Positions 21,491 to 37,292 of a stretch of DNA of 64,000 nucleotides are shown here, in pieces. Below the pieces are notes generated by a model. That model made no database searches, had not been told where the DNA came from, and saw only the letters and a list, made by a program, of their open reading frames with translations. How positions within the stretch are numbered: the stretch's first letter is position 1; each line of letters begins with the position of its first letter. A program made the translations under genes and the position numbers. Location: positions 295,045-359,044 of the IMG/VR virus record IMGVR_UViG_3300035698_035310, one strand, 5' to 3'.

Positions 21491-22666
21491 ATGAGCAAAT
21501 CAACTAAATCCACTTTCGTGCAAGAGCGCACAGATAAGTATTTCACAAAAACTAAAAATATTGTAGATATGTTTGGCGATAAAATCGTTACATATGCAGT
21601 ATTTCAACGTCGTGCAGTTATAGCAGCAACCAAGCTAGCGGTAGAACTGATCAAAGAACATTGTCCAGAGGCTACCGTGGTAGTTCATTACGAAGATGGC
21701 ACGCTTGTTCCACCACAATCCAAAATTATGTCTATCACTGTATCAATGAGTAAATTTGTTGAACTTGAAACATTGTGCCTACAGCGTGTTGGATTTACCC
21801 AAGTATGCGCCTACAATGCTTATAAGATGAGTATGGCACTTCCACACGTTCCATTCATGGATATGCACGGGCGACACGGGACAGGCGACGATATGATGAT
21901 TGCTGCCGCTTACGGTGCTTCCGTTGGATCGCGAACTGCGCGGATGCAGGGCGCTAAAGGTTTTGTTGGTACTTCCAACGATCTTACCGCACACTACTTC
22001 CCTATCAAACAAGGTATCGGAACTATGCCACACGCTGCTGTTGGTTACGCTGGAAGTAACATGAGGGCGATGGAAATGTTTGTTGAAGCCAATCCTGATG
22101 ACAAAAACCTTGTTTCATTGGTTGATTACTTCGGAAAAGAAACAACCGAAGCACTTGAAGTATCCAAATGGTTTTATGATAAAGAATTGGATAAAAAAGG
22201 TAAAACTTTGGGTATGCGCCTTGATACACACGGTGGTCGTTTTGCCGAGGGTCTTGATTATGAAAAATCAGTTGAGATTGTATGTAACTGGCTTAAAGTA
22301 AATCCTACCGATGAATACGCTGCTGTGCGTAAGGTTATTGGTGATGCGGTATTCGATGCTGCGGCTGATGACTATATCGACAAGGTTCGTAAAATTTTGT
22401 TTGGAACTGGTGTAAGTGCGGCAAACATTATCAATATGCGCGAACAGTTGAATAACAAAAAGTTTAACAATGTCGCAATTGTTGCAAGTTCTGGCTTTGA
22501 TTTGTTCAAGTGTACCATTATGGCACAAGTGAACGCACCAATCACCATGGTCGGAACCGGCTCATTCTTGCCTAAAACCCTAAGTGAAACATATGCAACT
22601 GCTGATATCGTTCAATATGGCGATACCCCTTCCGTTAAGGTTGGACGCGAATGGTTGCTGGATTAA
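21491..22666 (+). CDS. Nicotinate phosphoribosyltransferase-like protein (PncB/NAMPT superfamily)
   Basis: TDKYF, GTS, GTMPHA, LVDY, RLDTHG, ASSGF and GTGS type II PRTase motifs; operon with nadE, nadM-like and pncA. Confidence 0.8.
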   Translation: MSKSTKSTFVQERTDKYFTKTKNIVDMFGDKIVTYAVFQRRAVIAATKLAVELIKEHCPEATVVVHYEDGTLVPPQSKIMSITVSMSKFVELETLCLQRVGFTQVCAYNAYKMSMALPHVPFMDMHGRHGTGDDMMIAAAYGASVGSRTARMQGAKGFVGTSNDLTAHYFPIKQGIGTMPHAAVGYAGSNMRAMEMFVEANPDDKNLVSLVDYFGKETTEALEVSKWFYDKELDKKGKTLGMRLDTHGGRFAEGLDYEKSVEIVCNWLKVNPTDEYAAVRKVIGDAVFDAAADDYIDKVRKILFGTGVSAANIINMREQLNNKKFNNVAIVASSGFDLFKCTIMAQVNAPITMVGTGSFLPKTLSETYATADIVQYGDTPSVKVGREWLLD

Positions 22667-22678
22667 CGGAGTAGTAAC

Positions 22679-23047
22679 ATGAATAAATTAGGATGGCTTT
22701 TTAAAACGGTATTTGACGCTAATCGCGAACGATCCCTTAATACGATAGAAAGACGTATGGGAAAACTTAGCGAAGAACACGGTGAGTTATGGGAAGCATA
22801 TCTTAATGTAACTAGCGCCAACAATGGCAAAAATAAAACATGGCATGATGTGCGCGAAGAAGCCATCGATTCAGTCATTGTTGCGCTAGATGTTATGGCT
22901 ACACGTTTGCCCATTGATGAGGGTAAAACTGACGAAGAAATTGAAGAAGAAATCGTTGAAGTTGTTAACGTAAAAATGGAAAAATGGAAAAAGACTAAAA
23001 CTTGTAAGACTGATGCGGTATCAGAGGATGCTACAGATGCCAATTGA
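22679..23047 (+). CDS. MazG-like nucleotide pyrophosphohydrolase
   Basis: KLSEEHGEL...EEAID...K..KW. Confidence 0.75.
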   Translation: MNKLGWLFKTVFDANRERSLNTIERRMGKLSEEHGELWEAYLNVTSANNGKNKTWHDVREEAIDSVIVALDVMATRLPIDEGKTDEEIEEEIVEVVNVKMEKWKKTKTCKTDAVSEDATDAN

Positions 23048-23318
23048 AAAATATGAATTGCGTGATGGTGAAGAATACATTGATGAATATATCAATGAAG
23101 AAGGAAAGCACGTAACCATCGTTAAAGAATCGAGTGGTAATATAATTCATGGATGGGTTATGGACATCGATCCAGCAGATTATGCACTTATTGAGAAAGC
23201 CGCAGCACTGGAAGGTGTGGATATACAAGATTTTATTGACAGCGCTATAAAATCTGCTATACTGTTAGCAATAGACGAAGTTAATATGAAATCAGCAATA
23301 GAGGATATATCAGACTAA
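23037..23318 (+). CDS. Hypothetical protein (possible ribbon-helix-helix)
   Basis: GAGGA RBS before ATG 23037; DYALIEKAAALEG...DFI. Confidence 0.55.
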   Translation: MPIEKYELRDGEEYIDEYINEEGKHVTIVKESSGNIIHGWVMDIDPADYALIEKAAALEGVDIQDFIDSAIKSAILLAIDEVNMKSAIEDISD

Positions 23319-23587
23319 TGGAAGATTTTAAAGAATATACTGAAGAACAATGCTACAAAGACGAGCGCCCCGATAACGATACACGTGTTACATATTTTAA
23401 ACACAAGGGCGACAAAAAAGCATATTCAGTAACGGTAGCCGATGTTACATTGCAATTATCCGAAGAAATAGAACGTCAGGATCGTGGCACATTTAAAGAG
23501 TTCGCTGCGTTATTGCTGAATAAACATCTAACAGAAGAACGAGAAATTGAAGGAGTTAAAAGTTTCTTTGATGAAATTTCAGACTAA
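23318..23587 (+). CDS. Hypothetical protein
   Basis: TAATG coupling with the previous gene; 89 aa. Confidence 0.65.
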   Translation: MEDFKEYTEEQCYKDERPDNDTRVTYFKHKGDKKAYSVTVADVTLQLSEEIERQDRGTFKEFAALLLNKHLTEEREIEGVKSFFDEISD

Positions 23588-23609
23588 TCGATAAGGAAGG
23601 AATACAAAA

Positions 23610-24101
23610 ATGATTAAACGATTCATACATATGCTTTGCCGGTGGTTTAAAATTCACGCTTATGATTTTCCGATGGCTGGAAATACTGCAACTATGATTC
23701 TTTATAATCCCGAGAGAAAAGAGGTATTGTTGGGGTTGAGAAGTGAAGATTCTGATGCATTTCCAAATCGTTGGTCACTTCCCGGTGGATATCTTAATGT
23801 TGGTACGGAACGCATGACGAGAGTTGCATCACGTGAAACAAAAGAAGAAGTTAATCTTGATATCGATGAATGGCGGTGGAATATATTTTATCTTGATGAT
23901 GAAATCGGAACCGACCCACGATATACACAAGTCATTAATATTTGTTATGATGCAATTGTGAGCGAGGCTCATGAATATGATAACCCTGTAGCGGGAGATG
24001 ACCTACGAGACGTTGAATGGTATTCAATTGAAAATGCTTTAAAAGTTGATCTACCATTTAATCACAATACTATTTTACGAGAGTTTGTTCAACAACTCTA
24101 A
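23610..24101 (+). CDS. NUDIX hydrolase (ADP-ribose pyrophosphatase-like)
   Basis: WSLPGG...RETKEE Nudix box; DPR, AGDD and LPFNH resemble the NadM-Nudix/NrtR ADPRase domain. Confidence 0.85.
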   Translation: MIKRFIHMLCRWFKIHAYDFPMAGNTATMILYNPERKEVLLGLRSEDSDAFPNRWSLPGGYLNVGTERMTRVASRETKEEVNLDIDEWRWNIFYLDDEIGTDPRYTQVINICYDAIVSEAHEYDNPVAGDDLRDVEWYSIENALKVDLPFNHNTILREFVQQL

Positions 24102-24166
24102 AAAATAAAACCAATGCAATAATGCATTAGGTATTACATAAACTTCAATCCCAAGGAGGGTTAGAA

Positions 24167-25219
24167 ATGACAAAACCAAAAAACACAATACTTGAAATTA
24201 GTCGACAAGATCAAATGGGCGCACTATCGCCGTGGTTTGATAAACATCTTGATATTTGTATTGATGATGGATATTTCGGCAGTGAAAAACTTCTAACAGA
24301 TATAGGCAATCATATCATCGAAGATTTGATAGCATATCGCATACAAACCGGTATTAGCACAGTCATTCTTGGTATGAGTGGTGGCGTCGATAGCGCATTA
24401 ACCGCCGCATTATTTAAAAGAGCAGGGTGGAAAGTGATTGGGGTTACAATGCCCATACATCAAGACCCTGAAGAAACAACACGTGGCGTTGATGCATGTG
24501 AAGCACTAGGCATCGAACATAAACATATCGATTTAACCTCGCTGTATAACGATGCCACTACTTCATTGGGTGATTTGGATGGTTTATTAGACGATGCGAA
24601 CGAAACAAATAAAGCAGTTCTTATTCGCCGTGGCAACGTTAAAGCACGGTTGCGTATGATTACATTATACAACCTTGCTGCAATGCATGGTGGTTTGGTT
24701 GCAAGCACTGATAACTATTCCGAACTAGCCGCTGGCTTCTGGACATTGCATGGCGACGTGGGTGATTTAAGCCCCATACAAAGCCTTACTAAGTCTTGGG
24801 AAGTGCCAATGCTTGCAAAACTATTCGGCGTTCCTGAAGAAACGTGGCGTGCAAAACCAACCGATGGATTGGGGGTTGATGCTGGTGATGAAGCACAATT
24901 CGGATTCACTTATCTTGAACTCGACCTTATGCTGTTAGCGATTGGTGATTTTTCTGCTGATGGATATAAAGACGATGAAATGCAAGAATTGGGTGGTGTC
25001 AATCGTGAAAATTTATTCAAAGTTATGGACGGTGATATCGATAAAGATGGACGCGCCACAACCGTGTTTAATAAATTATTGGATAGAATGGGAAGTTCGT
25101 GGTTTAAGCGTCACGGAACTGTTAATATAAAGCACCCATATGATAGCAGCCGTTATAATAGATTGGAACGCGTCGATTATGATCAATTTGTTCCACAAGT
25201 TATAAAAAGGAGCAACTGA
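24167..25219 (+). CDS. nadE: NH3-dependent NAD+ synthetase
   Basis: GMSGGVDS, GNVKARLRM, T.HGD..D and KPTDGL...DE; no glutaminase domain. Confidence 0.9.
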   Translation: MTKPKNTILEISRQDQMGALSPWFDKHLDICIDDGYFGSEKLLTDIGNHIIEDLIAYRIQTGISTVILGMSGGVDSALTAALFKRAGWKVIGVTMPIHQDPEETTRGVDACEALGIEHKHIDLTSLYNDATTSLGDLDGLLDDANETNKAVLIRRGNVKARLRMITLYNLAAMHGGLVASTDNYSELAAGFWTLHGDVGDLSPIQSLTKSWEVPMLAKLFGVPEETWRAKPTDGLGVDAGDEAQFGFTYLELDLMLLAIGDFSADGYKDDEMQELGGVNRENLFKVMDGDIDKDGRATTVFNKLLDRMGSSWFKRHGTVNIKHPYDSSRYNRLERVDYDQFVPQVIKRSN

Positions 25220-25220
25220 T

Positions 25221-26171
25221 ATGTCCCAATGGAAAAATATTAAATGTATCGAAAGTGCCGAAGGTAATGTAAGCAAGTTCGTATACACAAATGATACCGC
25301 AGTAGCAGAATCAGTTTTATACAAATATCCTGATTACAAATCACGGACAGTTATTTGTTGCTCAACAATGAGTGGATGTCCAGTTGGATGCCGCTTCTGT
25401 GGTGCTGGCGACTATTTCGTAAAATCACTTTCCGGTGAAGAAATCATTTCACAGGTTAAGTATTCCATCGATCAAACTGGTGTCGATCCTGCTACAATGG
25501 GTAGATTGCAAATCATGTTTATGTCTATGGGTGAGCCACTTCTTAATAAGAATGGTCTATCTGAAGCATTGAAGAAATTATATTTCATGTACCCAAATGC
25601 TGCATTGCTTATTTCCAGCATTGGACCAGATGTTGATTATGAATGGTTGATGGAACTAAGTGAACGTATCCCCACTATTGGATTACAGTTTTCCGTTCAT
25701 GAAGCAACCGATGAACGCCGTGACGCACTTATTCCATTCAAGAAAAAATTAACATTGGATGGTATTACGAAAGTTGGCGCTGAATGGAATAAACGAACCG
25801 GACGTAAACCGTATTTCAATTACTGTGCGGGTGATGAAAACTCATCTAGTGGCGATGCATTTAAAATGCGCAAACTGTTTGATCCAACCATTTGGAATGC
25901 GACAATAAGTGTTATATGTGAGCGAAATGAAGGTCTTCCAGCACGCAACGAACATCAACGCGAGTTGGCTTGTGATTTTTCTAGCAAATTACTTGAACTT
26001 GGTTTTGACGTCAGAGTTTTTGATCCAGCCGGTCAAGACGACACTGGCTCAGGCTGTGGTCAATTATGGTTTGTTCAGCGATGGATGGTAGACAATCCAG
26101 AGAAATCTAAACCAAGCATAGGTCATGGCATGGATAAAATACACGTGCCTACATTGGAGGTGGCATCATGA
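25221..26171 (+). CDS. RlmN/Cfr-like radical SAM methyltransferase (short form)
   Basis: ICCSTMSGCPVGCRFC, MSMGEP, SVH and terminal GCGQL; both RlmN-type catalytic Cys equivalents are present. Confidence 0.8.
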   Translation: MSQWKNIKCIESAEGNVSKFVYTNDTAVAESVLYKYPDYKSRTVICCSTMSGCPVGCRFCGAGDYFVKSLSGEEIISQVKYSIDQTGVDPATMGRLQIMFMSMGEPLLNKNGLSEALKKLYFMYPNAALLISSIGPDVDYEWLMELSERIPTIGLQFSVHEATDERRDALIPFKKKLTLDGITKVGAEWNKRTGRKPYFNYCAGDENSSSGDAFKMRKLFDPTIWNATISVICERNEGLPARNEHQRELACDFSSKLLELGFDVRVFDPAGQDDTGSGCGQLWFVQRWMVDNPEKSKPSIGHGMDKIHVPTLEVAS

Positions 26172-26845
26172 GCATACACAGAGTAGGGCTATCAGTAATG
26201 CGTGCACAACCATTTCACAAAGGGCATGAAGCAATCATTAACACGATGATATCTGAATGCGAAACTGTGGTTGTGTGTTTAGGTAGTGCGCAAAAATCAA
26301 GAGAAAAACATGATCCATGGACAATTGAAGAACGCATCGATATGATTCAACGTGTATATGGTGCATATAACAATAAAGGTGAATTTCTTGGTAGTAGAGT
26401 TAAAATCATTCCGTTGACTGATATTGGGGCTGCTACTCCACAAAAGTGGGTTAGTTATATTGTTGAAAAGATTGAGAAACTCGGTCTTCCTGAACCGACT
26501 GATTATTTTACTGGTTCAGAGTTTGACGCTGCATGGTTTAGAGATCATTTTGCCGCCGATTGGCGTGCATTAGAAGGACATTATTATAATCAATCTAAAG
26601 AGAAAGTAAATGGACAACCATCTGTTGAAGGCAATTCATATGAACGATATGTGGGTGAAAATGGAATATTTAGACGTTTACATAACATCCAACGACAAGA
26701 AAACAGAATTCCATCTGCTACGGAATTGCGTGGATTTATGGAATTGCGGTTGAATGATTGGAAAGAATGGATTGCAACTGTAAATCATGAAACACTTGAT
26801 GAAACATATCCAGACGAATTTAAAGTTCCAATGGATAACGAATAG
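26168..26845 (+). CDS. NadM-like nicotinamide/nicotinate mononucleotide adenylyltransferase
   Basis: RAQPFHKGH (HxGH), GSAQ...DPWT..ER and SATELR. Confidence 0.85.
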   Translation: MSIHRVGLSVMRAQPFHKGHEAIINTMISECETVVVCLGSAQKSREKHDPWTIEERIDMIQRVYGAYNNKGEFLGSRVKIIPLTDIGAATPQKWVSYIVEKIEKLGLPEPTDYFTGSEFDAAWFRDHFAADWRALEGHYYNQSKEKVNGQPSVEGNSYERYVGENGIFRRLHNIQRQENRIPSATELRGFMELRLNDWKEWIATVNHETLDETYPDEFKVPMDNE

Positions 26846-26847
26846 AG

Positions 26848-26876
26848 TTGACAATCTCTTAAAAATGTTATAATAT
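26848..26876 (+). promoter_or_regulatory. Sigma70-like promoter of pncA
   Basis: TTGACA-N17-TAATAT (TATAAT at 26869). Confidence 0.6.
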
Positions 26877-26933
26877 AAACATAGCGTTACCATTAAGGAA
26901 TGCTAATCATACTACCAATTGGAGGAGTATAAA

Positions 26934-27599
26934 ATGAGAAAATTTGAACAAGGAAATTTTAAACTTGCAGTAATCGTAGACGCACAAGAGGATTTTGTGT
27001 TGTCGACAGGTGCATTGCCCGTTCCGGGTGCAGAGGCATTGATTCCAGATATGGAAGAATACCTTAAAAATATAACATTGGAAAATGGATATGTAGGTGC
27101 GCTGTTTACCGCAGACACGCATAATGAAAAAGATTATCCTGAATCCAAAGAAGCCAAAGGCGATCCTGATGCCGTTGAACCAATTCCAGGTTTTCCACCA
27201 CATTGCATGCAAGGAACTGATGGTTTTAAATTTGCCATTAACCCTGCTAACGTAGCAATGGATAATAATGTTGGGCGTTTTATTCTCAACAAAGGCGTAT
27301 TTAATATGTGGGAAGAAGATAACATCGTTGTTCGACCTTTGGTGTTGGATGGTGAGCCGGTTTCTTATGGCGGTGCACAAGACCGAAATGAATTCTTCGA
27401 AACACTAAAATCAAATGGAATCGAAGACGTTGAAATCGTTGGATTTGCTGCTGATTACTGTGTTATGTGGGCAATTGCTGGATTTGTTGCACGCGGATTC
27501 AATGTTACACTTTATGATAATCTTACTGCTGGTATCGCAAAAGATATTCATGCAGTGGTGGAAACAGAATTTTCTAAAGAGAACGTACAAGTTCTTTAA
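26934..27599 (+). CDS. pncA: Nicotinamidase / pyrazinamidase
   Basis: GGAGGAG RBS; VDAQEDF, DTH, PPHC..GT.G, KG and GFAADYCV catalytic motifs. Confidence 0.9.
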   Translation: MRKFEQGNFKLAVIVDAQEDFVLSTGALPVPGAEALIPDMEEYLKNITLENGYVGALFTADTHNEKDYPESKEAKGDPDAVEPIPGFPPHCMQGTDGFKFAINPANVAMDNNVGRFILNKGVFNMWEEDNIVVRPLVLDGEPVSYGGAQDRNEFFETLKSNGIEDVEIVGFAADYCVMWAIAGFVARGFNVTLYDNLTAGIAKDIHAVVETEFSKENVQVL

Positions 27600-27613
27600 A
27601 GAAAATATTGAAA

Positions 27614-27641
27614 CAGTGGAGGGAATTATACCCCTCCACTG
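27614..27641 (+). terminator. GC-rich hairpin after pncA (no U tract)
   Basis: CAGTGGAGGG-N8-CCCTCCACTG. Confidence 0.5.
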
Positions 27642-27644
27642 CTC

Positions 27645-27974: not shown

Positions 27975-28344
27975 TATTTTACATATTCAAAAATGGGTAT
28001 ATCATATTGCGTTGAGACTTTATGGATGGAAATCCATTGATACTGCGCCAACAGACGGAACCAGTGTTATAATTCTCGAAAATATGCAATTAGAATATTG
28101 GAATGTTTTCGAAGCGCAATATATTAATGAAGAGCCATTACCTGGATGGAGAGGGGTATATGTAGCAAAATATGTTGGCGCAGATGAAACTAAACCACAT
28201 TATGTATCAAAAACTCTCGTCACAATTCCTGAATATTGGAAACCGATGCCAAAATCACCACGGTTTTATAAATTATGGTGTTTCGCATGCAATGATATTC
28301 AAGTAAAAATAGAGGAAGAAGAAGAAAAATGCCAACATACTTAG
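27967..28344 (+). CDS. Hypothetical protein (WxxIxTAPxDG / DUF551-like)
   Basis: WKSIDTAPTDGT...YWKPMPK; likely start ATG 27967. Confidence 0.65.
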   Translation: MFDILHIQKWVYHIALRLYGWKSIDTAPTDGTSVIILENMQLEYWNVFEAQYINEEPLPGWRGVYVAKYVGADETKPHYVSKTLVTIPEYWKPMPKSPRFYKLWCFACNDIQVKIEEEEEKCQHT

Positions 28345-28787
28345 AAGCAATAAACACAGATAATTTTATTTTAACAGGAAATAGAAGAACTATATTTTTA
28401 GCTGGTGGCATCACTGGATGCGTAGATTGGCAAAAAGTATCTAAAGATGCACTAATGGCATCAAACAAATATAAAATAATTTGCAATCCACGCCGTGCAG
28501 ATTTTGACGTAACTGATCCAACTGCATCTGAAAAACAAATTAAATGGGAAGCTGATCATTTAAAAATATGCACAGATATATTGTTTTGGTTTTCTAGTGA
28601 AACCATCCAACCAATTGCATTATTTGAATTGGGGAAATACCTCAATGAAAAAGATAATATTTTTGTTGGCTGCGATCCAGATTATTCAAGAAAATTTGAT
28701 GTTATTACACAGGTTGGTATATATAGACCAGACATCAAAGTGTGGGATAATTTAGATGATATGATGGAACATATTGTTTCATCATGA
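28329..28787 (+). CDS. Nucleoside 2-deoxyribosyltransferase-like protein
   Basis: IFLAGGI...DWQ, NPRR, QIKWE and PIALFELG. Confidence 0.8.
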   Translation: MPTYLEAINTDNFILTGNRRTIFLAGGITGCVDWQKVSKDALMASNKYKIICNPRRADFDVTDPTASEKQIKWEADHLKICTDILFWFSSETIQPIALFELGKYLNEKDNIFVGCDPDYSRKFDVITQVGIYRPDIKVWDNLDDMMEHIVSS

Positions 28788-29695
28788 AAAATAAACACAC
28801 TCCATTATATGATCCAGAAATAGCCAAAAAAATAACTGAAATTGGTAGACGTATTTTATATGAAATGAAAAAGGAAATGAAAAAAATGGAATCATTATTT
28901 GATGTAAATGGTCTAATGTTTTGGACGCAGCGCGAAATACGATTGCGCGAATCGTTTGCAAAACATTTTTCAGAAGAACTACACAATGCATTATTATATG
29001 AAAATAGAGCATGGGAATTTATTCAATTTGAAGGACCGCAACTAACCCCACGTTCAGCCATTAATCCCAACTATACAAATGATGATATATGGGTTCAACA
29101 AAACCATAGTAATATGAAAATAGGTGAACCATTTCCTGAAATTAGTAGCGATTTAGTTCTTCGACCCGAAACAACGCCTTCATCATACGTATATGCTAGA
29201 CATTTGTTAGACACCCATAGTGGAATTAAGCCACCATTTGTCATATGGCAAACTGGTAAAAGTTTTAGACGCGAACAAGATCAGGTGATAAAAAATATGC
29301 GCCTAAAAGAATTCTATCAACAAGAATTTCAATGCATATATACCGCTGATACAAAAAATGATTACCAAGAAGCCGTATTAGAGCCAGTTAGAAAAATGAT
29401 TGGTGAAATGGTAAACCTACCAACACGATTGGTGGAAAGCGATAGATTGCCTTCTTATAGCAAACGTACAATGGATGTGGAAGTTTGGATATCTGATAAC
29501 ATTAACGAGCCAGGATTCATATCTGACACTGGAAGATGGATGGAAGTTTGTTCGATATCTAAACGAACTGATTTTCCTGGTACAGTGAAATTCCAAACCA
29601 AAAATAAAATAGTCGAAAAAGATTTAGAAGTGCTTGAGGTCGCAATCGGATTAGACAGAATAAATTATTGCTTTGAACAAGGAAATATAAAATAA
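28784..29695 (+). CDS. Class II aaRS catalytic core, glycyl-tRNA synthetase (alpha2 type)-like, lacking the anticodon-binding domain
   Basis: LRPET, QTGKSFRRE (motif 2), RLKEFYQQEFQ, EVCSIS.RTDF and VLEVAIGLDR (motif 3), then the stop. True start may be ~28885. Confidence 0.75.
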   Translation: MKNKHTPLYDPEIAKKITEIGRRILYEMKKEMKKMESLFDVNGLMFWTQREIRLRESFAKHFSEELHNALLYENRAWEFIQFEGPQLTPRSAINPNYTNDDIWVQQNHSNMKIGEPFPEISSDLVLRPETTPSSYVYARHLLDTHSGIKPPFVIWQTGKSFRREQDQVIKNMRLKEFYQQEFQCIYTADTKNDYQEAVLEPVRKMIGEMVNLPTRLVESDRLPSYSKRTMDVEVWISDNINEPGFISDTGRWMEVCSISKRTDFPGTVKFQTKNKIVEKDLEVLEVAIGLDRINYCFEQGNIK

Positions 29696-29783: not shown

Positions 29784-30410
29784 TTGGATCAAGAACAAAT
29801 GAATTTAATACCAATGGTAGTGGAAACTACAGCAAAAGGCGAACGAGCCTATGATATATTTTCGAGAATGTTGCGTGAAAGAATTATCTTTCTTAATGGA
29901 CCTGTGAATGATACCGTAGCCAGTTTGGTTGTGGCACAAATGTTATTTTTGGAATCAGAAAATCCATCAAAAGATATTTCTTTTTACATCAATAGCCCCG
30001 GTGGCGTAGTTACTGCGGGTATGGCAATTTATGACACTATGCAATATATTCGCCCTAATGTATCCACTGTTTGTATTGGTCAAGCAGCATCCATGGGATC
30101 GTTGTTATTGGCGGCTGGTGCAGAAGGTAAGCGTTTCGCACTACCTAATGCAAGAATTATGATTCACCAACCATCAGGCGGCGCACAAGGACAGGCATCT
30201 GATATTGAAATTCAAGCAAAAGAAATCATTCGCATAAAGAAAGATTTGACACAAATTTACGTTGATCACGGCGTTAAAGAAAAATCATATGAAGATTTTC
30301 TTGCAGCAATGGATCGTGATAATTTTCTATCTGCCACTGAAGCAGTTGAAGAATGGGGTATAATTGATGCGGTGGTTGATTCAAGACCGCCAGTTGAAGA
30401 AAACGATTAA
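29784..30410 (+). CDS. clpP: ATP-dependent Clp protease proteolytic subunit (host-like)
   Basis: LIPMVVE...[29 protein letters not shown] and MDRDNF. Confidence 0.95.
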
Positions 30411-31352: not shown

Positions 31353-31368
31353 TTCATTAACTCCTGTT

Positions 31369-31459: not shown

Positions 31460-31471
31460 CTTTAAATTTCA

Positions 31472-31499
31472 TTGACATTTCCTTATTTTCTGTTATAAT
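31472..31499 (+). promoter_or_regulatory. Sigma70-like promoter
   Basis: TTGACA-N16-TATAAT. Confidence 0.65.
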
Positions 31500-31529
31500 A
31501 CATCAAATAATAACAAAGGAGGACATATA

Positions 31530-32540
31530 ATGTCATTTATCAAATGGACAGATATTGAAAATTTTCATAATGTAAGAAAAGCTGCTGTAAAATATTACAG
31601 CATTTCAGAACCAATCACATATCGTGGAAAAATAAAACTCCATGGAACAAATGCAGGCATTATCATTAAACCCAATGGTGATATATTTGCACAATCGAGA
31701 AGTGGTATCATCGGAACCGGTAACGATAATGCAGGGTTTGCCCAATACATAGAAAACACCAAAGATTATTGGTCTACATTAGCTACCACTGAACAAATCA
31801 CGATATTTTGCGAGTGGTTTGGTAAAGGCATTCAAAAAGGCGTTGCTGCTTCGCAGATTGTTTCCAAACATGTTGCTATTTTTTCGATTCAAATCGGCGA
31901 ATATGACGAAGATGGCAATGCCGATATGATTATTGAGCCATCAGAAATCGAAAAATATATTGCAGTTGATAGTAAACCCGATAATGTTCATATTCTTCCT
32001 TGGTATGGTGAAAAGATTATCATCGATTATACAGATACTACATCGTTGGAAGTCATAGTTGAGAAACTTAACAAAGAAGTGGAAACGGTAGAAGCATGCG
32101 ATCCTTGGATCAAAGACGTGTTTGGTATTAGCGGAACCGGGGAAGGTTTGGTTTATTATCCAATCAGTTTTTCTAAAAATGGTGTAATCAATCGCTGGCA
32201 TTTAAGCCGTTATTTGATGAAATGCAAAGGCGAGAAGCACAAAGTTCAGAAGGATAGAAAGGCGGTTATTCTCGATCCTGAAATAGTTGCTTCCTCGAAT
32301 GCGTTTGTTGAAAAGTTTGTCACAGAATCCCGATTGGAACAAGGCGCAACGGAAGTCAATCGCGGTGTTCTTGATTTTGATACAAAACTTATTGGACCAT
32401 TTTTGAAATGGTTCAATGGTGATGTTAATAAAGAATGCACCGATGAACTTGAAGCTTCTGGACTTGAATGGAAACAAGTTGCCAAGGGTGTTAGCACTGC
32501 TGCACGCAATTGGTATATTGAAAAGTCGAAGGAACTTTAA
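31530..32540 (+). CDS. RNA ligase, Rnl2 family
   Basis: KIKLHGTNA (motif I), DNAGFA, CEWFG.GIQKG, EGLV, K.K and the C-terminal VTESRL domain. Confidence 0.8.
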   Translation: MSFIKWTDIENFHNVRKAAVKYYSISEPITYRGKIKLHGTNAGIIIKPNGDIFAQSRSGIIGTGNDNAGFAQYIENTKDYWSTLATTEQITIFCEWFGKGIQKGVAASQIVSKHVAIFSIQIGEYDEDGNADMIIEPSEIEKYIAVDSKPDNVHILPWYGEKIIIDYTDTTSLEVIVEKLNKEVETVEACDPWIKDVFGISGTGEGLVYYPISFSKNGVINRWHLSRYLMKCKGEKHKVQKDRKAVILDPEIVASSNAFVEKFVTESRLEQGATEVNRGVLDFDTKLIGPFLKWFNGDVNKECTDELEASGLEWKQVAKGVSTAARNWYIEKSKEL

Positions 32541-33010
32541 TGACTGAAAAGAACATAACAATCATGAACATCAAACCGAATATTTTTGCTGTTCATGATT
32601 CTCATTGTTGCCCCGAACATGGTTGCAAGTATGGCGATCCTGATTGCCCTGTTATGGATGGGTTAGCGTCGGGAGTTACATGTGAAGATTGCGATGACGA
32701 ACAACAAGATTTGCTAAGAGAGCAATTAAGAATAGTCAATTTAGAAAATGAGCCTCGTGCTCGATATGAAGAAAAAGAAACTAAAAAACTTGGTGATGTT
32801 ATTGGGTATGGTCGAATGATGCAACTAGCAGAACAACTGTGGCGTAAAAAACTTGAAGAAGATGATATGGGGGGTGGCGAGTTTGTATCTGGACCATGCA
32901 AAGCATTGACTGTCCCATGTGGATGTAAATCAGGATGTGATTGGTGCGAGGGTGCTGAATGGTTAACTAAAAAAGTTAAAGATATCAAAAATGAAATGAC
33001 GAGGGTTTAA
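32540..33010 (+). CDS. Cys-rich hypothetical protein
   Basis: HCCPEHGCKYGDPDCP, IGYGRMMQ and CDWC. Confidence 0.7.
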   Translation: MTEKNITIMNIKPNIFAVHDSHCCPEHGCKYGDPDCPVMDGLASGVTCEDCDDEQQDLLREQLRIVNLENEPRARYEEKETKKLGDVIGYGRMMQLAEQLWRKKLEEDDMGGGEFVSGPCKALTVPCGCKSGCDWCEGAEWLTKKVKDIKNEMTRV

Positions 33011-33277
33011 ATGACTAAAAATACTGAAATTCGTGCGGTAATAGATGAACGTTATCTATTCGAGTTACAAAAAAAATTAGACATACCAAATATAACCAAT
33101 TTGGTTAAAGTGGCATTTACTATATTAGATTGGGCTGCGGGTGAAGCAATAAATGGACGAAAAATCATGTCTGCCGATATTGATGGCTATGATGCTAAAA
33201 TATTGAAAATTCGTGAACTTGACGAAATTAATAACACATACGATTCTACTGAAAAACCAAGAAATGACGTTCCATGA
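33011..33277 (+). CDS. Hypothetical protein
   Basis: GAGG RBS; 88 aa. Confidence 0.65.
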   Translation: MTKNTEIRAVIDERYLFELQKKLDIPNITNLVKVAFTILDWAAGEAINGRKIMSADIDGYDAKILKIRELDEINNTYDSTEKPRNDVP

Positions 33278-33447
33278 ATTTTTCACGGTTGTGTTCAGAA
33301 TATCTTGACAGACAGCCCACACAAAACCAAAAAACAGATAAATTAGACCAATACTTTCGAAATCATCCTATTAAATTTTGCTGTGGTATTATTGCTCTTT
33401 TGGCAATAGAAACGTTTTGCTTGTTTTATTTTGGAGGTGTGGTATAA
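33274..33447 (+). CDS. Small membrane protein (57 aa, not in the ORF track)
   Basis: ATGA overlap; MNFSRLC...FCCGIIALLAIETFCLFYFGGVV. Confidence 0.45.
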   Translation: MNFSRLCSEYLDRQPTQNQKTDKLDQYFRNHPIKFCCGIIALLAIETFCLFYFGGVV

Positions 33448-33480
33448 TACACTAACTTATAACTGTAGAAAGTAAATAAA

Positions 33481-35160
33481 ATGGAAAACCTAAATGATTT
33501 AAAGTCGTGGCCTTTTGTTGAGGCGCGGCGTCTTGTAGAGCATACACAAGATAAGGAAGTGGTTGTTTTTTCCACTGGATATGGTCCGTCTGGTCCGCCA
33601 CACATTGGAACCTTTGGTGAAGTTGCACGAACTGTAATGGTTATGAATGCATTTCGACAATTATCCGATAAGCCAATGCGTCTTATTGTATTTTCAGATG
33701 ATATGGACGCTTTGCGTGCCATTCCAGAAAATGTACCCAATCCAGATAACATGCTTGATGATTTTATCGGCATTCCACTGTCTTGGATTCCTGATCCATA
33801 TGAAACACATGATAGTTATTCTGCACATAATAATGCAGCACTTTGTGATTTTTTAGATTTACACGGTTATGATTATGAATTTATAATGTCATCGGATTGC
33901 TATGAAGGTGGTGTATTTAATGAGACATTGCGATTATTTGCGTCACGAGTTGATGAGATCAGCAACATTATTACGCATGATTATGGTATCAATGGCGGAA
34001 ATCGTAAGGACACTTATTGTCCATTTCTTCCAATTAACACAATCGAGGGAACAGTTTTCGAGTTGGATGAATGGGAAATTATTGAGGTTGAAAATATGTC
34101 AATTGGTTCTTATGGAAATGGCGAGATTGCACCGTCGCCATTTCTTGCATTGCGATATACGAATGCAAGCGGTGGGGTAGGAATGTGCAATATTGATAAC
34201 GGCAAGGTTAAGCTGCAATGGAAGGCAGATTGGCCTATGCGATGGATTGCTCTAGGCATTGATTATGAAATGCATGGCAAGGATTTAATTGGGTCTGCGC
34301 AAGTTGGACAACGTATTTGCAAGTTGCTTGGTAAGAAGGCACCGCTTAACTATATGTATGAACTATTTTTAGATGAAGATGGTGAAAAGATTTCTAAGTC
34401 TAAGGGAAATGGATTGTCATTGACCGATTGGATGAGCTATAGCACCCCTGCGTCTGTGGCATATTATATGTTTCAGAACCCACGCAAGTCGCGTAAGTTG
34501 CACTTTGGTGTTATTCCGCAAATGACAGACGACTATTTGAAGATGTTGGATAAGTATATCCAAGAGCCAAGCATGGATAATCCAGTTTGGCATATCCATA
34601 ATGGCGATGTTCCTACGGTTGGTTCACCAGTAATGTTCAGCATGATTCTAAATTTGGTCAGCATTACTGATACCCAAGACCCATATGTATTGATTGAGTT
34701 CATTCGGAACTATGCGCATGGCGCTTCGTTCAAGAATCCAATTCTTCGTGATTTGATCAATGGTGCATTGAACTATTACACAACCGAAGTTCTTCCTAAG
34801 AAGACATATCGTGCTCCAACTGAAATGGAGCGTGTCGCACTTATTTCTTTACATGGGTCATTGCGTATGGTTCAAGCGCAACATAATGCTATGCTTGAAT
34901 TCATGAATACAAATATGGTAAAGATGGATGCCATCAATGAAGCAGGTGGCGAGAAGGCTGTATTGGAAGAAGCAATCACTTCGGTAACATATGAAGTAGG
35001 CAAGGTTCATTTCGGCGAAGAAAAGGATTCATTGCGAAAGTATTTCAAGAGTGTATATGAAATAATCATGGGTCAATCAAGTGGACCTAGATTGCCAGTA
35101 TTCATTGTGATGTTGGGCATTGATGAATTTTTGAGAATTTTAAAGGAAAAGATTCAATAA
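33481..35160 (+). CDS. lysS: Lysyl-tRNA synthetase, class I
   Basis: WPFVEA, TGYGPSGPPHIG, KLQWKADW, YEMHGKDL, KISKSKGN and GQSSGPR. Confidence 0.95.
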   Translation: MENLNDLKSWPFVEARRLVEHTQDKEVVVFSTGYGPSGPPHIGTFGEVARTVMVMNAFRQLSDKPMRLIVFSDDMDALRAIPENVPNPDNMLDDFIGIPLSWIPDPYETHDSYSAHNNAALCDFLDLHGYDYEFIMSSDCYEGGVFNETLRLFASRVDEISNIITHDYGINGGNRKDTYCPFLPINTIEGTVFELDEWEIIEVENMSIGSYGNGEIAPSPFLALRYTNASGGVGMCNIDNGKVKLQWKADWPMRWIALGIDYEMHGKDLIGSAQVGQRICKLLGKKAPLNYMYELFLDEDGEKISKSKGNGLSLTDWMSYSTPASVAYYMFQNPRKSRKLHFGVIPQMTDDYLKMLDKYIQEPSMDNPVWHIHNGDVPTVGSPVMFSMILNLVSITDTQDPYVLIEFIRNYAHGASFKNPILRDLINGALNYYTTEVLPKKTYRAPTEMERVALISLHGSLRMVQAQHNAMLEFMNTNMVKMDAINEAGGEKAVLEEAITSVTYEVGKVHFGEEKDSLRKYFKSVYEIIMGQSSGPRLPVFIVMLGIDEFLRILKEKIQ

Positions 35161-35161
35161 A

Positions 35162-35617
35162 ATGGAAATATTACAATATTTAATAACACGGTGTAATATG
35201 GTTGGAAGTCGGGATATATGCCCCGAAACTGCAACCGACAACACCGATCATGATTATTTGATGTTGGCTAATCCGATTGGCGCATTTTTTGTTAGAATTG
35301 TATTATATTTGAATAGATATAAAAGACGTCATGGCGGTATAACATATTTCAATCCTATACCTGTCATGACGCAAACTGCTGGATTTCAAGTGTGGAAAAG
35401 TATTAAAAATAATATAACAGTAGATGTTTTATTGACTACCGATAAAGGGTTTTATGATAAATTCATGGAAGCACACAATGAAGCAAAACGTTTGAAAATA
35501 TTAGACAAAGCAGAACGATTGGTATTGTTTCAGAAAATAATATATGACCACGTCATAACAGTAGAAGATATGCAAAAATATTTAGATGCAAAAATACAAA
35601 AACGAAATAATAACTGA
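35162..35617 (+). CDS. Possible minimal nucleotidyltransferase
   Basis: VGSR...TDHDYL (GS...DxD), pol-beta-like. Confidence 0.45.
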   Translation: MEILQYLITRCNMVGSRDICPETATDNTDHDYLMLANPIGAFFVRIVLYLNRYKRRHGGITYFNPIPVMTQTAGFQVWKSIKNNITVDVLLTTDKGFYDKFMEAHNEAKRLKILDKAERLVLFQKIIYDHVITVEDMQKYLDAKIQKRNNN

Positions 35618-35682
35618 CGTTTTATATTGCCTTTACTTGGATGGTTGAAGTATAATACAAAATCATTAATTAGAGAAATATA

Positions 35683-36333
35683 ATGGCAAAAACAGAGTTA
35701 AGACGAAAACATCCATATTTTGGAAAGTTTAAATTCAAAATAAATGTATATAATAAAGATTGGGTTAAAGATTATAAATTGGCATATCCTACTTTTTTAA
35801 CTGATATTACAGATATAGAAAAAGAACAATACATAAAAGTAAAAGATTATTTAACTAAATATTGGAAAGTCGAAAAAGATTTTAGATGGAATGATAATTG
35901 GAATGTGTATTTAAGAGATGCTGATGTATATGATCATGTTCTATCAAGATTTCCGACGTTTTTATCAAAAGTTATTAGACCAGCACCAGGTTATGAGGAT
36001 TTAGAAGGAAGGGGGGCGCTTAATGAACATATATTATGGTATGGAAAATTTTCATATAAAATATCATTGAGAAATGTCGATAGCACAACAAATCATTTAT
36101 ATAAAAAATGGTGTATGGAAAATTTAGAAAGCGATATAAAATACTCAACCGGTTATAGTGATACAAGTTTTTATTTTATGAATTCATTTGACGCGATGGC
36201 ATTTAAATTAAGATTTGGTGATTATGTTAAAGATACGTTTATTGCCGATAAAGACGAAGCTGCTATACAATTAAGAAATCGAATGGATCAAGCTATTCAA
36301 GAATATAACAACTACATGGAAGGTGAATCATGA
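35683..36333 (+). CDS. Hypothetical protein (DAxxFKL family)
   Basis: YFGKF.FKI and WYGKF.YKI duplicated domains; KWC...FYF...DAMAFKL. Confidence 0.7.
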
Positions 36334-37292
36334 CAAAACACAATAAAAATGAAATAATTTTAATATCTGGAAATAGCAACAGACCACTATCCGAAGAAAT
36401 ATCGGATATACTTGATATCCCATTATCAAAAGTTGAAATATCTTCATTTTCGGATGAAGAAACTAAAATAGAAATAAGTGACAATGTGCGTGGTGAAGAT
36501 GTATATGTTATACAACCAACATCACAACCGGCGAACCAAAACCTAATGGAACTACTAATCACCATAGATGCCCTTAAGCGTTCATCTGCGCGGCGTATAA
36601 CGGCTGTAATACCATATTATGGATATGCACGCCAAGATGCAAAACCAGCCCCCAGAACACCAATAACGGCAAAATTGGTAGCCGATTTGATTACTACTGC
36701 TGGTGCTGACAGAGTTCTAACGATGGATTTTCACTCACGCCAAGCACAAGGGTTTTTTAATATTCCAACAGATAACCTTTTCGCACAACCATTTTTCGTC
36801 ACGGACATTAAAAAACAATTCAAAAAATTAGATAATGTTATTATCGTATCACCAGATGTTGGTGGCGTGGTCAGAGCAAGAGCGCTTGCTAAGAAAATAA
36901 ATGCCGATCTTGCCATTATCGACAAGCGTCGTGAAAAAGCAAACGTTAGTGAAGTTATGAATATCATTGGCGATATAGACGGTCATGATTGTATCATTAT
37001 TGACGATATGGTAGATACCGCAGGAACATTATGCAATGCTGCTGATGCGTTGATAGAAAAGGGCGCTAAATCAGTTCACGCATATGCAACACATGGCGTA
37101 TTGAGTGGACCGGCAACTGAAAGACTTAACGCATCAGAATCATTATCATCTTTAACTATCACAAATAGCGTACAATATCCATACAATGGCGAAGCATCCG
37201 ATAAAGTTAGAATAGTATCCATTGCTCCATTGCTTGCAAGGGCGATAAGTAGAATAGCCAAAGAATCTTCAGTTAGTGAGTTATTTGAATAA
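36330..37292 (+). CDS. prs: Ribose-phosphate pyrophosphokinase (PRPP synthetase)
   Basis: [26 protein letters not shown] and DDMVDTAGT. Confidence 0.95.

What the first reader, a model, noticed from the sequence alone, without database searches (positions are those of the whole stretch)
21491..37292. Complete deamidated NAD+ rebuilding route (PncA, PncB-like, NadM-like, NadE, plus NUDIX and Prs): candidate anti-defence pathway distinct from NARP1/NARP2
Seen: PRTase (21491), NUDIX (23610), nadE (24167), nadM-like (26168) and pncA (26934) cluster within 6 kb, with prs at 36330. Established: defence NADases (SIR2, TIR, SEFIR effectors) split NAD+ into nicotinamide and ADP-ribose. The described phage counter-pathways are two-gene amidated routes: NARP1 (Adps+Namat) and NARP2 (Nampt+Nmnat). 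Inference: this set recycles both products. ADPR goes to ribose-5-P (NUDIX) then PRPP (Prs); nicotinamide goes to nicotinate (PncA), NaMN, NaAD and NAD+ (NadE). PncA and NadE are needed only on a deamidated route, and deamidated intermediates may escape NADases.
Basis: partly seen in the sequence, partly recalled or inferred. Interest (0 to 1): 0.8.

Follow-up and report, generated by a model that had tools for sequence, protein, structure and literature searches.

The report
Phage nicotinamide-to-NAD+ salvage gene module
A huge salt-lake phage carries a conserved gene set that should rebuild NAD+ from nicotinamide by way of nicotinate. Related sets occur in two cultured jumbo phages, so it can be tested as a possible fourth way for phages to resist NAD+-depleting bacterial immunity.

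Summary
All six genes are at the stated coordinates, in a 359-kb huge-phage contig from a salt lake. They are PncA (catalytic triad and metal site intact), a type II phosphoribosyltransferase, NUDIX, NH3-type NadE, a NadM-like adenylyltransferase and canonical Prs.

The five clustered genes form a real module. They recur together in eight other huge-phage contigs (PRTase 52-84% identical), in at least two gene orders. In three of those contigs a glutamine-type NadE replaces the NH3 type.

Cultured jumbo phages Phosso and Atu_ph07 carry homologous NUDIX, NMNAT and PncA genes beside a canonical PncB. This displacement, the similarity ranking (NAPRT, then QPRT, then NAMPT/Namat) and the linkage to PncA and NadE argue that the divergent PRTase makes NaMN from nicotinate. 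The module is therefore not NARP1, NARP2 or NARP3.

The anti-defence role is inferred only. The claim that deamidated intermediates escape NADases has no support here.

Novelty is moderate. A 2024 survey already annotated Preiss-Handler clusters (pncB-nadD-nadE) in gut jumbo phages and suggested counter-defence. This architecture is a new, untested variant of a known kind.

The parts
21363..21391 (+). Promoter-like site (TTGACA, 17 nt, TATTAT) about 100 nt upstream of the PRTase gene
   Evidence: 11 of 12 consensus positions. Promoter-like sites are not enriched in the region overall (102 found against 86 expected), so this is only a candidate.
21491..22666 (+). Divergent type II phosphoribosyltransferase, inferred nicotinate phosphoribosyltransferase (nicotinate + PRPP to NaMN)
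   Evidence: NCBIfam hits only NAPRT models, all below cut-off. The family profile hits PDB NAPRTs 2i14, 2f7f and 1ytd, then QPRT, and no NAMPT. The AF2 model has pLDDT 96.5, and Foldseek ranks NAPRTs first, then QPRTs, then NAMPT/Namat. Invariant residues are Y17, R128, H181 and R243, with a GTMPHA motif as in archaeal NAPRT. In Phosso and Atu_ph07 a canonical PncB accompanies the homologous NUDIX, NMNAT and PncA genes.
22679..23587 (+). Three small ORFs (122, 101 and 89 aa) of unknown function; variable filler, not core
   Evidence: No Pfam family beyond a weak TacA1 hit. Only one has a weak homolog in one related locus. Related modules carry 0 to 5 unrelated small ORFs at this position.
23610..24101 (+). 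NUDIX hydrolase of the NrtR / NadM-Nudix (ADP-ribose pyrophosphatase) type; inferred ADPR to AMP + ribose-5-P
   Evidence: Pfam NUDIX 48 bits. Best PDB matches are NrtR-like Nudix proteins 2fml, 3i9x and 3gz5. Structure neighbours include viral NMNAT-NUDIX fusions at TM 0.82. The E-x7-REUxEE box is conserved in four phage orthologs. Substrate not tested.
24167..25219 (+). NH3-dependent NAD+ synthetase (NadE), single domain with phage-specific N-terminal and internal extensions
   Evidence: TIGR00552 145 bits against a cut-off of 63.65. PDB 3p52, 2e18 and 3fiu each score about 80 bits. SGGVDS PP-loop is conserved. A two-domain glutamine-type NadE replaces it in L008, L009 and L013.
25221..26171 (+). 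Radical SAM RlmN/Cfr-like gene; lineage-specific insertion, not part of the core module
   Evidence: TIGR00048 75 bits, Cfr models 64-70 bits, all below cut-off. Present only in the window and its 84% relative. Absent from L004, L005, L009, L012, L013 and Phosso.
26168..26845 (+). NadM-like (archaeal-type) nicotinate/nicotinamide mononucleotide adenylyltransferase
   Evidence: NF002243 64 bits and TIGR01527 59 bits, both below cut-off; Pfam CTP_transf_like passes. PDB 1ej2 and 1f9a archaeal NMNATs and 2qjo NadM-Nudix match. HxGH (PFHKGH) and SxTxxR (SATELR) motifs are present and conserved.
26934..27599 (+). Nicotinamidase PncA (nicotinamide to nicotinate + NH3)
   Evidence: Best PDB matches are nicotinamidases 1im5, 3pl1, 2wt9 and 2h0r. 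Residues aligned to the P. horikoshii and M. tuberculosis Asp/Lys/Cys triad and Asp/His/His metal site are present, and conserved in L004, L005 and L009 orthologs. The identities of those reference residues are from my own knowledge of 1IM5 and 3PL1.
27611..27644 (.). 14-bp stem hairpin directly after the pncA stop; possible end of the transcription unit
   Evidence: It was scored as terminator-like on the minus strand. Its role on the plus strand is inferred only.
28329..28787 (+). Nucleoside 2-deoxyribosyltransferase-like protein (PF15891); possible accessory, function unknown
   Evidence: Pfam 64 bits. 48% identical to the 'nucleoside deoxyribosyltransferase' two genes after PncA in phage Phosso. 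Directly after PncA in the 84% relative. The family is mostly viral and sometimes fused to NUDIX or Metallophos domains.
36330..37292 (+). Canonical class I ribose-phosphate pyrophosphokinase (Prs; ribose-5-P + ATP to PRPP); loosely linked supplier
   Evidence: NF002320 472 bits against 297, TIGR01251 380 against 113. PDB 3dah scores 363 bits. Close to the module in L004 (one gene away) and L005. Absent within 10 kb in L009 and the ERZ1761208 contig.

Best explanation
The cluster is a conserved phage module for remaking NAD+ from nicotinamide through deamidated intermediates.

Proposed steps:
1. PncA deamidates nicotinamide to nicotinate.
2. The divergent PRTase joins nicotinate to PRPP to give NaMN.
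3. The NadM-like enzyme adenylates NaMN to NaAD.
4. NadE amidates NaAD to NAD+ using ammonia and ATP.
5. The NUDIX enzyme most likely splits ADP-ribose into AMP and ribose-5-phosphate. The phage Prs nearby turns that into PRPP for step 2.

What is shown: the fold and family of each protein, intact catalytic motifs, and conserved co-location with component swapping. What is inferred: every substrate assignment, and the order of steps 3 and 4.

The likely biological purpose is to keep NAD+ available during infection. That would include cells whose SIR2, TIR or SEFIR defences have cleaved NAD+ to nicotinamide and ADPR, making this functionally a further NAD+ reconstitution pathway.
For: - Gene identities.
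- Intact catalytic motifs, conserved among orthologs.
- The five functions co-occur next to this PRTase family in the window and eight other phage contigs, in at least two orders: PRT-NUDIX-NadE-NMNAT-PncA and NadE-PRT-NUDIX-NMNAT-PncA.
- None of the four bacterial loci with this PRTase family has them.
- NadE is swapped for a two-domain glutamine-type NAD synthetase in L008, L009 and L013.
- In cultured phages Phosso and Atu_ph07 the PRTase is replaced by a threshold-passing PncB: NF003704 461 and 465 bits against 379. The window PRTase has no BLAST similarity to either PncB.
- Two independent displacements that keep the same chemistry argue for nicotinate to NaMN to NaAD to NAD+.
- PRTase similarity ranks NAPRT first, then QPRT, then NAMPT/Namat.
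- In L013 the module is interleaved with PnuC and a NadR-like gene, the two components of experimentally validated NARP3 (PMC13464706).
- NARP2, which also runs on PRPP, defeats Thoeris and DSR2 (10.1101/2024.02.11.579819).
Against: - There is no biochemical, expression or phenotypic data. No RNA run was listed.
- The PRTase, NMNAT and PncA all score below the NCBIfam equivalog cut-offs. The PRTase shares only 15-20% identity with any solved NAPRT.
- The NUDIX substrate is unknown. Iyer et al. instead read such Nudix domains as NAD+ regulators (PMC9503650).
- Prs is not tightly linked and is a common phage nucleotide-metabolism gene.
- A route of four to six steps that costs much ATP looks a poor emergency response next to NARP1 or NARP2, which fits general metabolic support just as well.
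- The rest of the genome (359 kb or more) was not searched for NAMPT, Namat or Adps.
Confidence: 0.65

Rival explanations
1. The biochemistry is the same, but the purpose is general metabolic support, as an auxiliary metabolic gene set. The module raises or maintains NAD+ for a very large phage's own replication and NAD(P)-dependent enzymes, or complements a host that lacks nicotinamide salvage. It would have no specific link to NADase immunity.
For: - The module sits among metabolic, translation and RNA-repair genes: aaRS, ClpP, RNA ligases, DHFR, ThyA and Prs.
- NARP2-type salvage raises NAD+ even without a defence system (10.1101/2024.02.11.579819).
- PMC11662467 describes 'NAD-jumbo phages' with pathways complementary to those of their hosts.
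- The route is long and costly in ATP.
Against: - The entry point is PncA acting on nicotinamide, and a NUDIX of ADPR-pyrophosphatase type is always present. These two substrates are exactly what NADase effectors release.
- In L013 the module is interleaved with a NARP3-like PnuC/NadR pair and sits next to a cREC domain gene. Iyer et al. list cREC among ADPr-processing domains (PMC9503650).
- The two readings do not exclude each other.
Confidence: 0.3
2. Francisella-type order. NadE acts as an NMN synthetase (NaMN to NMN), and the NadM-like enzyme then adenylates NMN to NAD+. No NaAD would be formed.
For: - The adenylyltransferase is NadM-type, not NadD.
- In F. tularensis, replacement of NadD by NadM goes with NadE working as an NMN synthetase (PMC3376133, citing Sorci 2009).
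- The Francisella enzyme 3fiu is among the three best PDB matches of the phage NadE, at 78 bits.
Against: - The three best matches score almost the same. They include P. horikoshii NadE, and archaeal NadE (M. jannaschii) is a true NaAD amidase with no NMN synthetase activity.
- Archaeal NadM accepts both NaMN and NMN (PMC3376133).
- Related modules use a two-domain glutamine-dependent NAD synthetase with orthologous NMNATs, which fits the canonical order.
Confidence: 0.15
3. The PRTase uses nicotinamide or another base. The core would then be NARP2-like (PRTase plus NMNAT), with PncA and NadE as unrelated passengers.
For: - The PRTase belongs to a family with no characterised member and falls below every NAPRT cut-off.
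- NAMPT and Namat share the fold, at TM about 0.55.
Against: - No NAMPT model hit appears in NCBIfam or PHROGs.
- NAPRTs rank first by both sequence profile and fold.
- PncA and NadE stay linked to this PRTase across contigs whose PRTases are only 52-84% identical, even though NadE changes type.
- A canonical PncB accompanies the homologous NUDIX, NMNAT and PncA genes in Phosso and Atu_ph07.
Confidence: 0.07

Closest known systems
Bacterial PncA-PncB-NadD-NadE nicotinamide/nicotinate salvage (Preiss-Handler pathway)
   Same: The predicted chemistry is the same: nicotinamide to nicotinate to NaMN to NaAD to NAD+. PncA and NadE are recognisable homologs with intact active sites.
   Different: It is phage-encoded. 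The NAPRT step is taken by a divergent family, 15-20% identical to solved NAPRTs and below all equivalog cut-offs. NadD is replaced by a NadM-like enzyme. A NUDIX enzyme is an obligatory neighbour.
Preiss-Handler gene clusters of 'NAD-jumbo phages' (pncB-nadD-nadE, e.g. Kuafu_71; PMC11662467)
   Same: These are huge phages carrying a complete deamidated NAD+ route as a cluster. A counter-defence role was suggested, and the evidence is bioinformatic only.
   Different: That description names canonical pncB, nadD and nadE from KEGG annotation in gut phages. Here the set is PncA, a NAPRT-like enzyme, NUDIX, a NadM-like enzyme and NadE, in environmental phages. PncA makes nicotinamide, the actual NADase product, the entry point.
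NARP2 (Nampt + Nmnat/Nudix, Vibrio phage KVP40)
   Same: Both rebuild NAD+ from nicotinamide, PRPP and ATP. Both have a NadM-type adenylyltransferase and an associated Nudix function. Both depend on PRPP.
   Different: There is no NAMPT. The amidated one-step entry is replaced by PncA plus a NAPRT-like enzyme, with a final NadE amidation. NUDIX is a separate gene. [quoted passage not shown] NadV elsewhere in the genome was not excluded.
NARP1 (Adps + Namat)
   Same: Both start from the NADase products ADPR and nicotinamide. Both contain a Prs-fold enzyme and a type II PRTase-fold enzyme.
   Different: Prs here is a canonical PRPP synthetase (472 bits, about 363 bits to Burkholderia Prs). It is not an Adps, which is about 27% identical to B. 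subtilis Prs. The PRTase is nearer to NAPRT than to Namat, and the two genes are 13 kb apart. ADPR would be broken down to ribose-5-P rather than pyrophosphorylated.
NUDIX-NMNAT-PncA plus PncB (plus NadE in Phosso) loci of Sinorhizobium phage Phosso (PV764938.1) and Agrobacterium phage Atu_ph07 (MF403008.1)
   Same: The NUDIX, NMNAT and PncA genes are homologous (24-41% identity) and in the same order. Phosso also has NadE and a 48%-identical NDT-like gene two genes after PncA.
   Different: The PRTase is a canonical PncB with no detectable similarity to the window enzyme. No paper found in my searches describes these loci as a pathway. Attai 2018 uses the Atu_ph07 NAPRT only as a PCR marker (PMC6102473).

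Membership tests
NARP1 | Adps: a Prs-like enzyme that is divergent from housekeeping Prs and pyrophosphorylates ADPR | tested here: not met
   The window Prs passes the Prs subfamily cut-offs (NF002320 472 against 297; TIGR01251 380 against 113). Its best solved relatives are bacterial Prs at 327-363 bits. Activity not assayed.
NARP1 | Namat (NAMPT-like ADPR-PP:nicotinamide transferase) in an operon with Adps | tested here: not met
   The PRTase ranks NAPRT first; Namat 9w5w is only rank 33. It lies 13 kb from Prs.
NARP2 | Nicotinamide phosphoribosyltransferase (Nampt/NadV) | tested here: not met
   No NAMPT model hit in NCBIfam or PHROGs for the PRTase. No NAMPT in the profile-versus-PDB sequence search. 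The rest of the genome was not searched.
NARP2 | NMN adenylyltransferase (NadM-type, often fused to Nudix) | tested here: met
   A NadM-like NMNAT with HxGH and SxTxxR motifs. NUDIX is a separate gene two genes upstream.
NARP3 | PnuC nicotinamide riboside transporter plus a bifunctional NadR-like kinase/adenylyltransferase | tested here: not met
   No PnuC or NadR hit among the window ORFs scanned. Not every small ORF was scanned. Related contig L013 carries both inside its module.
PncA / Preiss-Handler salvage | Nicotinamidase with the Asp-Lys-Cys triad and the Asp-His-His metal site | tested here: met
   All six aligned positions are present and conserved in four phage orthologs. The NCBIfam PncA equivalog score is below cut-off (32 against 174).
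PncA / Preiss-Handler salvage | Nicotinate phosphoribosyltransferase | tested here: inconclusive
   The protein is NAPRT-like by profile and fold, but far below the equivalog cut-offs (104 against 378). Context and displacement by a true PncB support the function. Substrate not assayed.
PncA / Preiss-Handler salvage | NaMN adenylyltransferase NadD | tested here: not met
   No NadD is present; a NadM-like enzyme stands in its place. Archaeal NadM accepts NaMN (PMC3376133), so the step can still be served.
PncA / Preiss-Handler salvage | NAD+ synthetase NadE | tested here: met
   TIGR00552 scores 145 against a cut-off of 63.65, and the PP-loop SGGVDS is present.
NAD-jumbo phage biosynthetic clusters (PMC11662467) | A phage over 200 kb with all genes of one salvage or Preiss-Handler route, clustered | tested here: met
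   The contig is 359 kb, and the same protein also occurs on a 570-kb contig. By annotation the full route lies within 6.1 kb.

The most novel reading that the evidence does not exclude
This is a fourth, deamidating NAD+ reconstitution pathway of phages. A five-enzyme module, fed by phage Prs, would convert both NADase products back to NAD+. Nicotinamide would go through PncA and a new, largely phage-borne class of nicotinate phosphoribosyltransferase. ADPR would go through NUDIX. The module would thereby defeat SIR2, TIR and SEFIR defences. Because it needs only nicotinamide plus ribose-5-P or PRPP, it might also work against defences such as aRES, whose ADPR-1''-phosphate product blocks NARP1.
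Probability: 0.35. Interest if true: 0.8.

Novelty: new variant of a known kind. Interest (0 to 1): 0.6.

Why it matters
NAD+ depletion is one of the commonest end-points of bacterial immunity. Three phage NAD+ reconstitution pathways have been validated so far, and all are amidated.

A conserved deamidating module would show that phages have also recruited the Preiss-Handler logic, starting from the nicotinamide that NADases release. It would add a new class of NAPRT-like enzyme.

It would also give a system that can be tested at once, because homologous modules sit in the cultured phages Atu_ph07 and Phosso. Even if it proves to be a general metabolic booster, it revises the published rule that phage NadM always works with NadV.

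Tried and rejected
- **Nucleotide and protein searches of GenBank phages with the module and the PRTase.** No match. The PRTase family is absent from 50,697 deposited phage records.
- **Is Prs an Adps?** Rejected.
- **Is the 350-aa ORF after Prs a Namat-like enzyme?** Rejected. It is a signal-peptide TctC-like binding protein.
- **Bacterial context of the PRTase family.** Looked at in Sporomusa and Burkholderiales for NAD genes; uninformative, as the genes are solitary.
- **Small ORFs inside the module as conserved parts.** Rejected; they are essentially unconserved.
- **Residue-level nicotinate versus nicotinamide determinants.** Only a motif-level mapping was possible: Y17, R128, H181 and R243, with Ala after the His as in archaeal NAPRT, mapped through the E. 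faecalis alignment and PMC4442680.
- **Sorci 2009** (NMN synthetase determinants) could not be read.
- **Transcript evidence.** No RNA run was listed.
- **Supplementary tables of PMC11662467** are not held, so I could not see whether that survey already lists this architecture.
- **Tree of the PRTase family.** The backbone is unresolved. Bacterial members form one clade among several phage lineages, and no direction of transfer can be claimed.

Full report
**Source and setting**

The window matches IMG/VR contig IMGVR_UViG_3300035698_035310 (359 kb). The same PRTase protein is also recorded on a 570-kb contig. DNA runs that hold the region are salt-lake metagenomes, and no RNA run was listed. 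The window is about 35% G+C, almost all on one strand, and has no tRNA genes.

It carries typical huge-phage cargo:
- a family B DNA polymerase fragment and a 5'-3' exonuclease;
- a MoxR-like AAA protein and a DUF2201 metallopeptidase/VWA protein;
- ClpP, class I LysRS and a class II aaRS core;
- two RNA ligases and a kinase-phosphatase;
- DHFR, ThyA and homing endonucleases.

**Checking the observation**

| Gene | Coordinates | Evidence |
|---|---|---|
| NadE | 24167-25219 | Passes its curated threshold, TIGR00552 145 against 63.65 |
| Prs | 36330-37292 | Passes NF002320, 472 against 297 |
| NUDIX | 23610-24101 | Passes the Pfam threshold |
| PncA | 26934-27599 | Passes the Pfam isochorismatase threshold |
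| NMNAT | 26168-26845 | Passes the Pfam CTP_transf_like threshold |
| PRTase | 21491-22666 | Recognisable, but below all equivalog cut-offs |

- **PncA.** It starts at ATG 26934 behind a GGAGGA. Its best solved relatives are all nicotinamidases. The positions aligned to the Asp/Lys/Cys triad and the Asp/His/His metal site of the P. horikoshii and M. tuberculosis enzymes are present, and they are kept in orthologs down to 37% identity.
- **NMNAT.** It is of the archaeal NadM type and has the HxGH and SxTxxR motifs.
- **NUDIX.** It has an intact E-x7-REUxEE box. It is closest to NrtR-type and NadM-fused Nudix domains, which form the ADP-ribose pyrophosphatase lineage.

**The PRTase**

This is the crux. 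It hits eight NCBIfam NAPRT models (best 104 bits, cut-off 378) and no NAMPT model. It has no PHROG and no tblastn match in 50,697 GenBank phage records.

It belongs to a compact family: 54 representatives at E up to 1e-30 among 1.8 billion cluster representatives. About 8,000 members appeared in the word-indexed search.

A family profile finds the solved NAPRTs of P. furiosus, E. faecalis and T. acidophilum, then a QPRT, and no NAMPT. An AlphaFold model (pLDDT 96.5) ranks four NAPRTs first, then QPRTs, then NAMPT and Namat, at TM about 0.6 and 15-20% identity.

Family-invariant Y17, R128, H181 and R243 fall in the motifs TDxY, R(R/H), GTxxH and RxD. In human NAPRT those motifs hold Y21, R171, H213 and R318 (PMC4442680). 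The mapping goes through the E. faecalis alignment, so it is motif-level inference. The GTMPHA motif is shared with the archaeal NAPRTs.

**Is it a module?**

I looked at the neighbourhood of PRTase homologs from 84% down to 52% identity.

| Contig | PRTase identity | Neighbourhood |
|---|---|---|
| 247-kb ENA contig | 84% | Fully syntenic with the window |
| L005 | 71% | PRT-NUDIX-NadE-NMNAT-PncA, no radical-SAM gene |
| L004 | 66% | Same order, no radical-SAM gene; Prs one gene beyond PncA |
| L012 | 61% | PRT-NUDIX-NadE-NMNAT-PncA, no radical-SAM gene |
| 161-kb ENA contig | 52% | Order NadE-PRT-NUDIX-NMNAT-PncA, different surroundings, no Prs within 10 kb |
| L009 | 52% | Order NadE-PRT-NUDIX-NMNAT-PncA, different surroundings, no Prs within 10 kb |
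| L008, L009, L013 | 52-58% | The NadE is a two-domain CN_hydrolase + NAD_synthase enzyme |
| L013 | 58% | PnuC and a NadR-like gene (the two NARP3 components) lie between NMNAT and PncA; a cREC-domain gene follows |

Bacterial members of the PRTase family, in Sporomusa and Burkholderiales, are solitary genes.

The core module is therefore PRTase, NUDIX, NadE, NMNAT and PncA. The radical-SAM gene and the small ORFs are lineage-specific filler. Prs is a loosely linked supplier.

**Cultured relatives**

tblastn with PncA found only seven phage records. Two are isolated jumbo phages.

- **Sinorhizobium phage Phosso (469 kb).** Its locus reads NadE, PncB-type NAPRT, four small ORFs, NUDIX, NMNAT, PncA, one ORF, then an NDT-like gene.
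- **Agrobacterium phage Atu_ph07 (490 kb).** It has PncB and then, about 3 kb away, NUDIX-NMNAT-PncA.

Their NMNAT, PncA and NUDIX proteins are homologous to the window's at 24-41% identity. Phosso's NDT-like protein is 48% identical to window 28329-28787.

Their PRTases pass the curated PncB thresholds (461 and 465 bits against 379; TIGR01514 286 and 293 against 269.55). They have no detectable similarity to the window PRTase.

So two slots of the module have been refilled independently with enzymes of known chemistry: PRTase by PncB, and NH3-NadE by glutamine-NadE. This is the strongest evidence available here that the window PRTase is a nicotinate phosphoribosyltransferase and that the pathway runs through NaMN and NaAD.

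Canonical PncB itself is rare in phages, at 13 records. In several huge or gut phage records it lies next to NadE. In one 4-kb contig it lies next to both NadE and PncA.

**Mechanism**

Established enzymology of these families gives the following route:
1. nicotinamide to nicotinate (PncA);
2. nicotinate + PRPP to NaMN (PRTase);
3. NaMN + ATP to NaAD (NadM-like);
4. NaAD + ATP + NH3 to NAD+ (NadE);
5. ADPR to AMP + ribose-5-P (NUDIX), and ribose-5-P + ATP to PRPP (Prs).

All substrate assignments are inference. The alternative Francisella order, NaMN to NMN to NAD+, remains possible because the adenylyltransferase is NadM-type. However, archaeal NadM is bifunctional and archaeal NadE is a true NaAD amidase (PMC3376133). 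The glutamine-type NadE in sister modules also favours the canonical order.

**Biological role**

The two entry substrates are exactly what SIR2, TIR and SEFIR effectors release. PRPP-based NARP2 is known to overcome Thoeris and DSR2 (10.1101/2024.02.11.579819). One sister module is physically merged with NARP3-type genes.

This makes counter-defence plausible but unproven. General NAD+ provisioning for a very large phage fits the data almost as well.

One further inference follows from the chemistry. A route that needs only nicotinamide plus ribose-5-P or PRPP would not be blocked by aRES, which defeats NARP1 by producing ADPR-1''-phosphate (10.64898/2026.01.28.702374).

**Comparison with what is known**

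It is not NARP1: Prs is canonical and there is no Namat. It is not NARP2: there is no NAMPT. It is not NARP3: there is no PnuC or NadR in the window.

It works like the bacterial PncA plus Preiss-Handler salvage, but with a divergent PRTase and NadM in place of NadD.

| Source | What it reports |
|---|---|
| PMC11662467 (2024) | KEGG-annotated pncB-nadD-nadE clusters in gut jumbo phages, with counter-defence suggested; mentions phage pncA |
| Iyer et al. (PMC7824862, PMC9503650) | List only NadV, NadM and NadR; state that NadM always accompanies NadV |
| Atu_ph07 paper (PMC6102473) | Does not describe the pathway |

No 'NARP4' or experimental study of a deamidated phage route turned up in my searches.

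**Verdict**

The biochemical reading is well supported by comparative evidence, and the anti-defence reading is plausible and testable. It is a new variant of a known kind.

Noticed in passing
window 37306-38358 (+) and 38370-39881 (-): The phage encodes a tripartite tricarboxylate transporter pair right after Prs. One gene is a signal-peptide TctC-like binding protein with no Pfam hit. Its structure neighbours are TctC at TM 0.80, and its family is large and mostly viral. The other is a TctA permease at 306 bits. From memory, some Bug/TctC proteins bind nicotinate, so precursor uptake is a lead only. The pair is absent next to Prs in L004 and L005.
   Followed up: partly
window 25221-26171 (+): A radical SAM RlmN/Cfr-like gene (75 bits to RlmN, 64-70 to Cfr models, all below cut-off) is inserted between NadE and NMNAT with overlapping stops and starts. 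It occurs only in this phage and its 84% relative. It may modify rRNA or tRNA.
   Followed up: partly
window 28329-28787 (+); L014 8037-8489: A PF15891 nucleoside-deoxyribosyltransferase-like protein lies near PncA here, in the 84% relative and in phage Phosso (48% identity). The family is mostly viral and is sometimes fused to NUDIX or calcineurin-like phosphoesterase domains. Its fold neighbours include TIR and DUF4062 proteins. It may process a nucleotide or an ADPR-derived molecule.
   Followed up: partly
L013 10628-12299 and 13251-13757: In a 200-kb relative, PnuC and a NadR-like AAA_28 gene (the NARP3 components), a GNAT and a cREC_REC gene are embedded in or beside the deamidated module. 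A cREC_REC gene also lies about 6 kb upstream in the ERZ1761208 contig.
   Followed up: partly
window 16979-18160 and 19580-20755: A MoxR-like AAA ATPase and a DUF2201 metallopeptidase/VWA protein lie just upstream of the module. The pair is conserved in that position in the 84% relative, L004 and L005, and DUF2201 also in L012.
   Followed up: no
window 28784-29695, 29784-30410, 31530-32540, 33481-35160, 41308-42531, 44110-45339: A translation and RNA-repair set is present: a class II aaRS catalytic core only (GlyRS-like), ClpP, two RNA ligases, a full class I LysRS and a kinase plus phosphoesterase resembling Pnkp. It is probably a counter-measure to tRNA-targeting defences.
   Followed up: no
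window 51554-62500: A stretch of lower G+C (28-33%) holds a B12-binding radical SAM protein (645 aa), two more radical SAM proteins, two Asp/Arg-hydroxylase-like proteins and a polysaccharide lyase, partly on the minus strand. It looks like a peptide- or sugar-modification cluster.
   Followed up: no
window 14571-15500 and 15594-16526: There are two adjacent paralogous proteins of about 310 aa with weak DHHA1 hits (DHH phosphoesterase family). They could be nanoRNase or cyclic-nucleotide phosphodiesterases.
   Followed up: no
PRTase family tree: Known bacterial members (Sporomusa, Burkholderiales) form a single clade (93/91 support) among several deep phage lineages. The family may be mainly phage-borne. 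The tree is unrooted and its backbone unresolved.
   Followed up: partly
window 45424-46056, 49873-50757 (-): HNH and GIY-YIG/NUMOD3 homing-endonuclease genes flank the DHFR (47982-48485) and ThyA (48996-49886) region.
   Followed up: no
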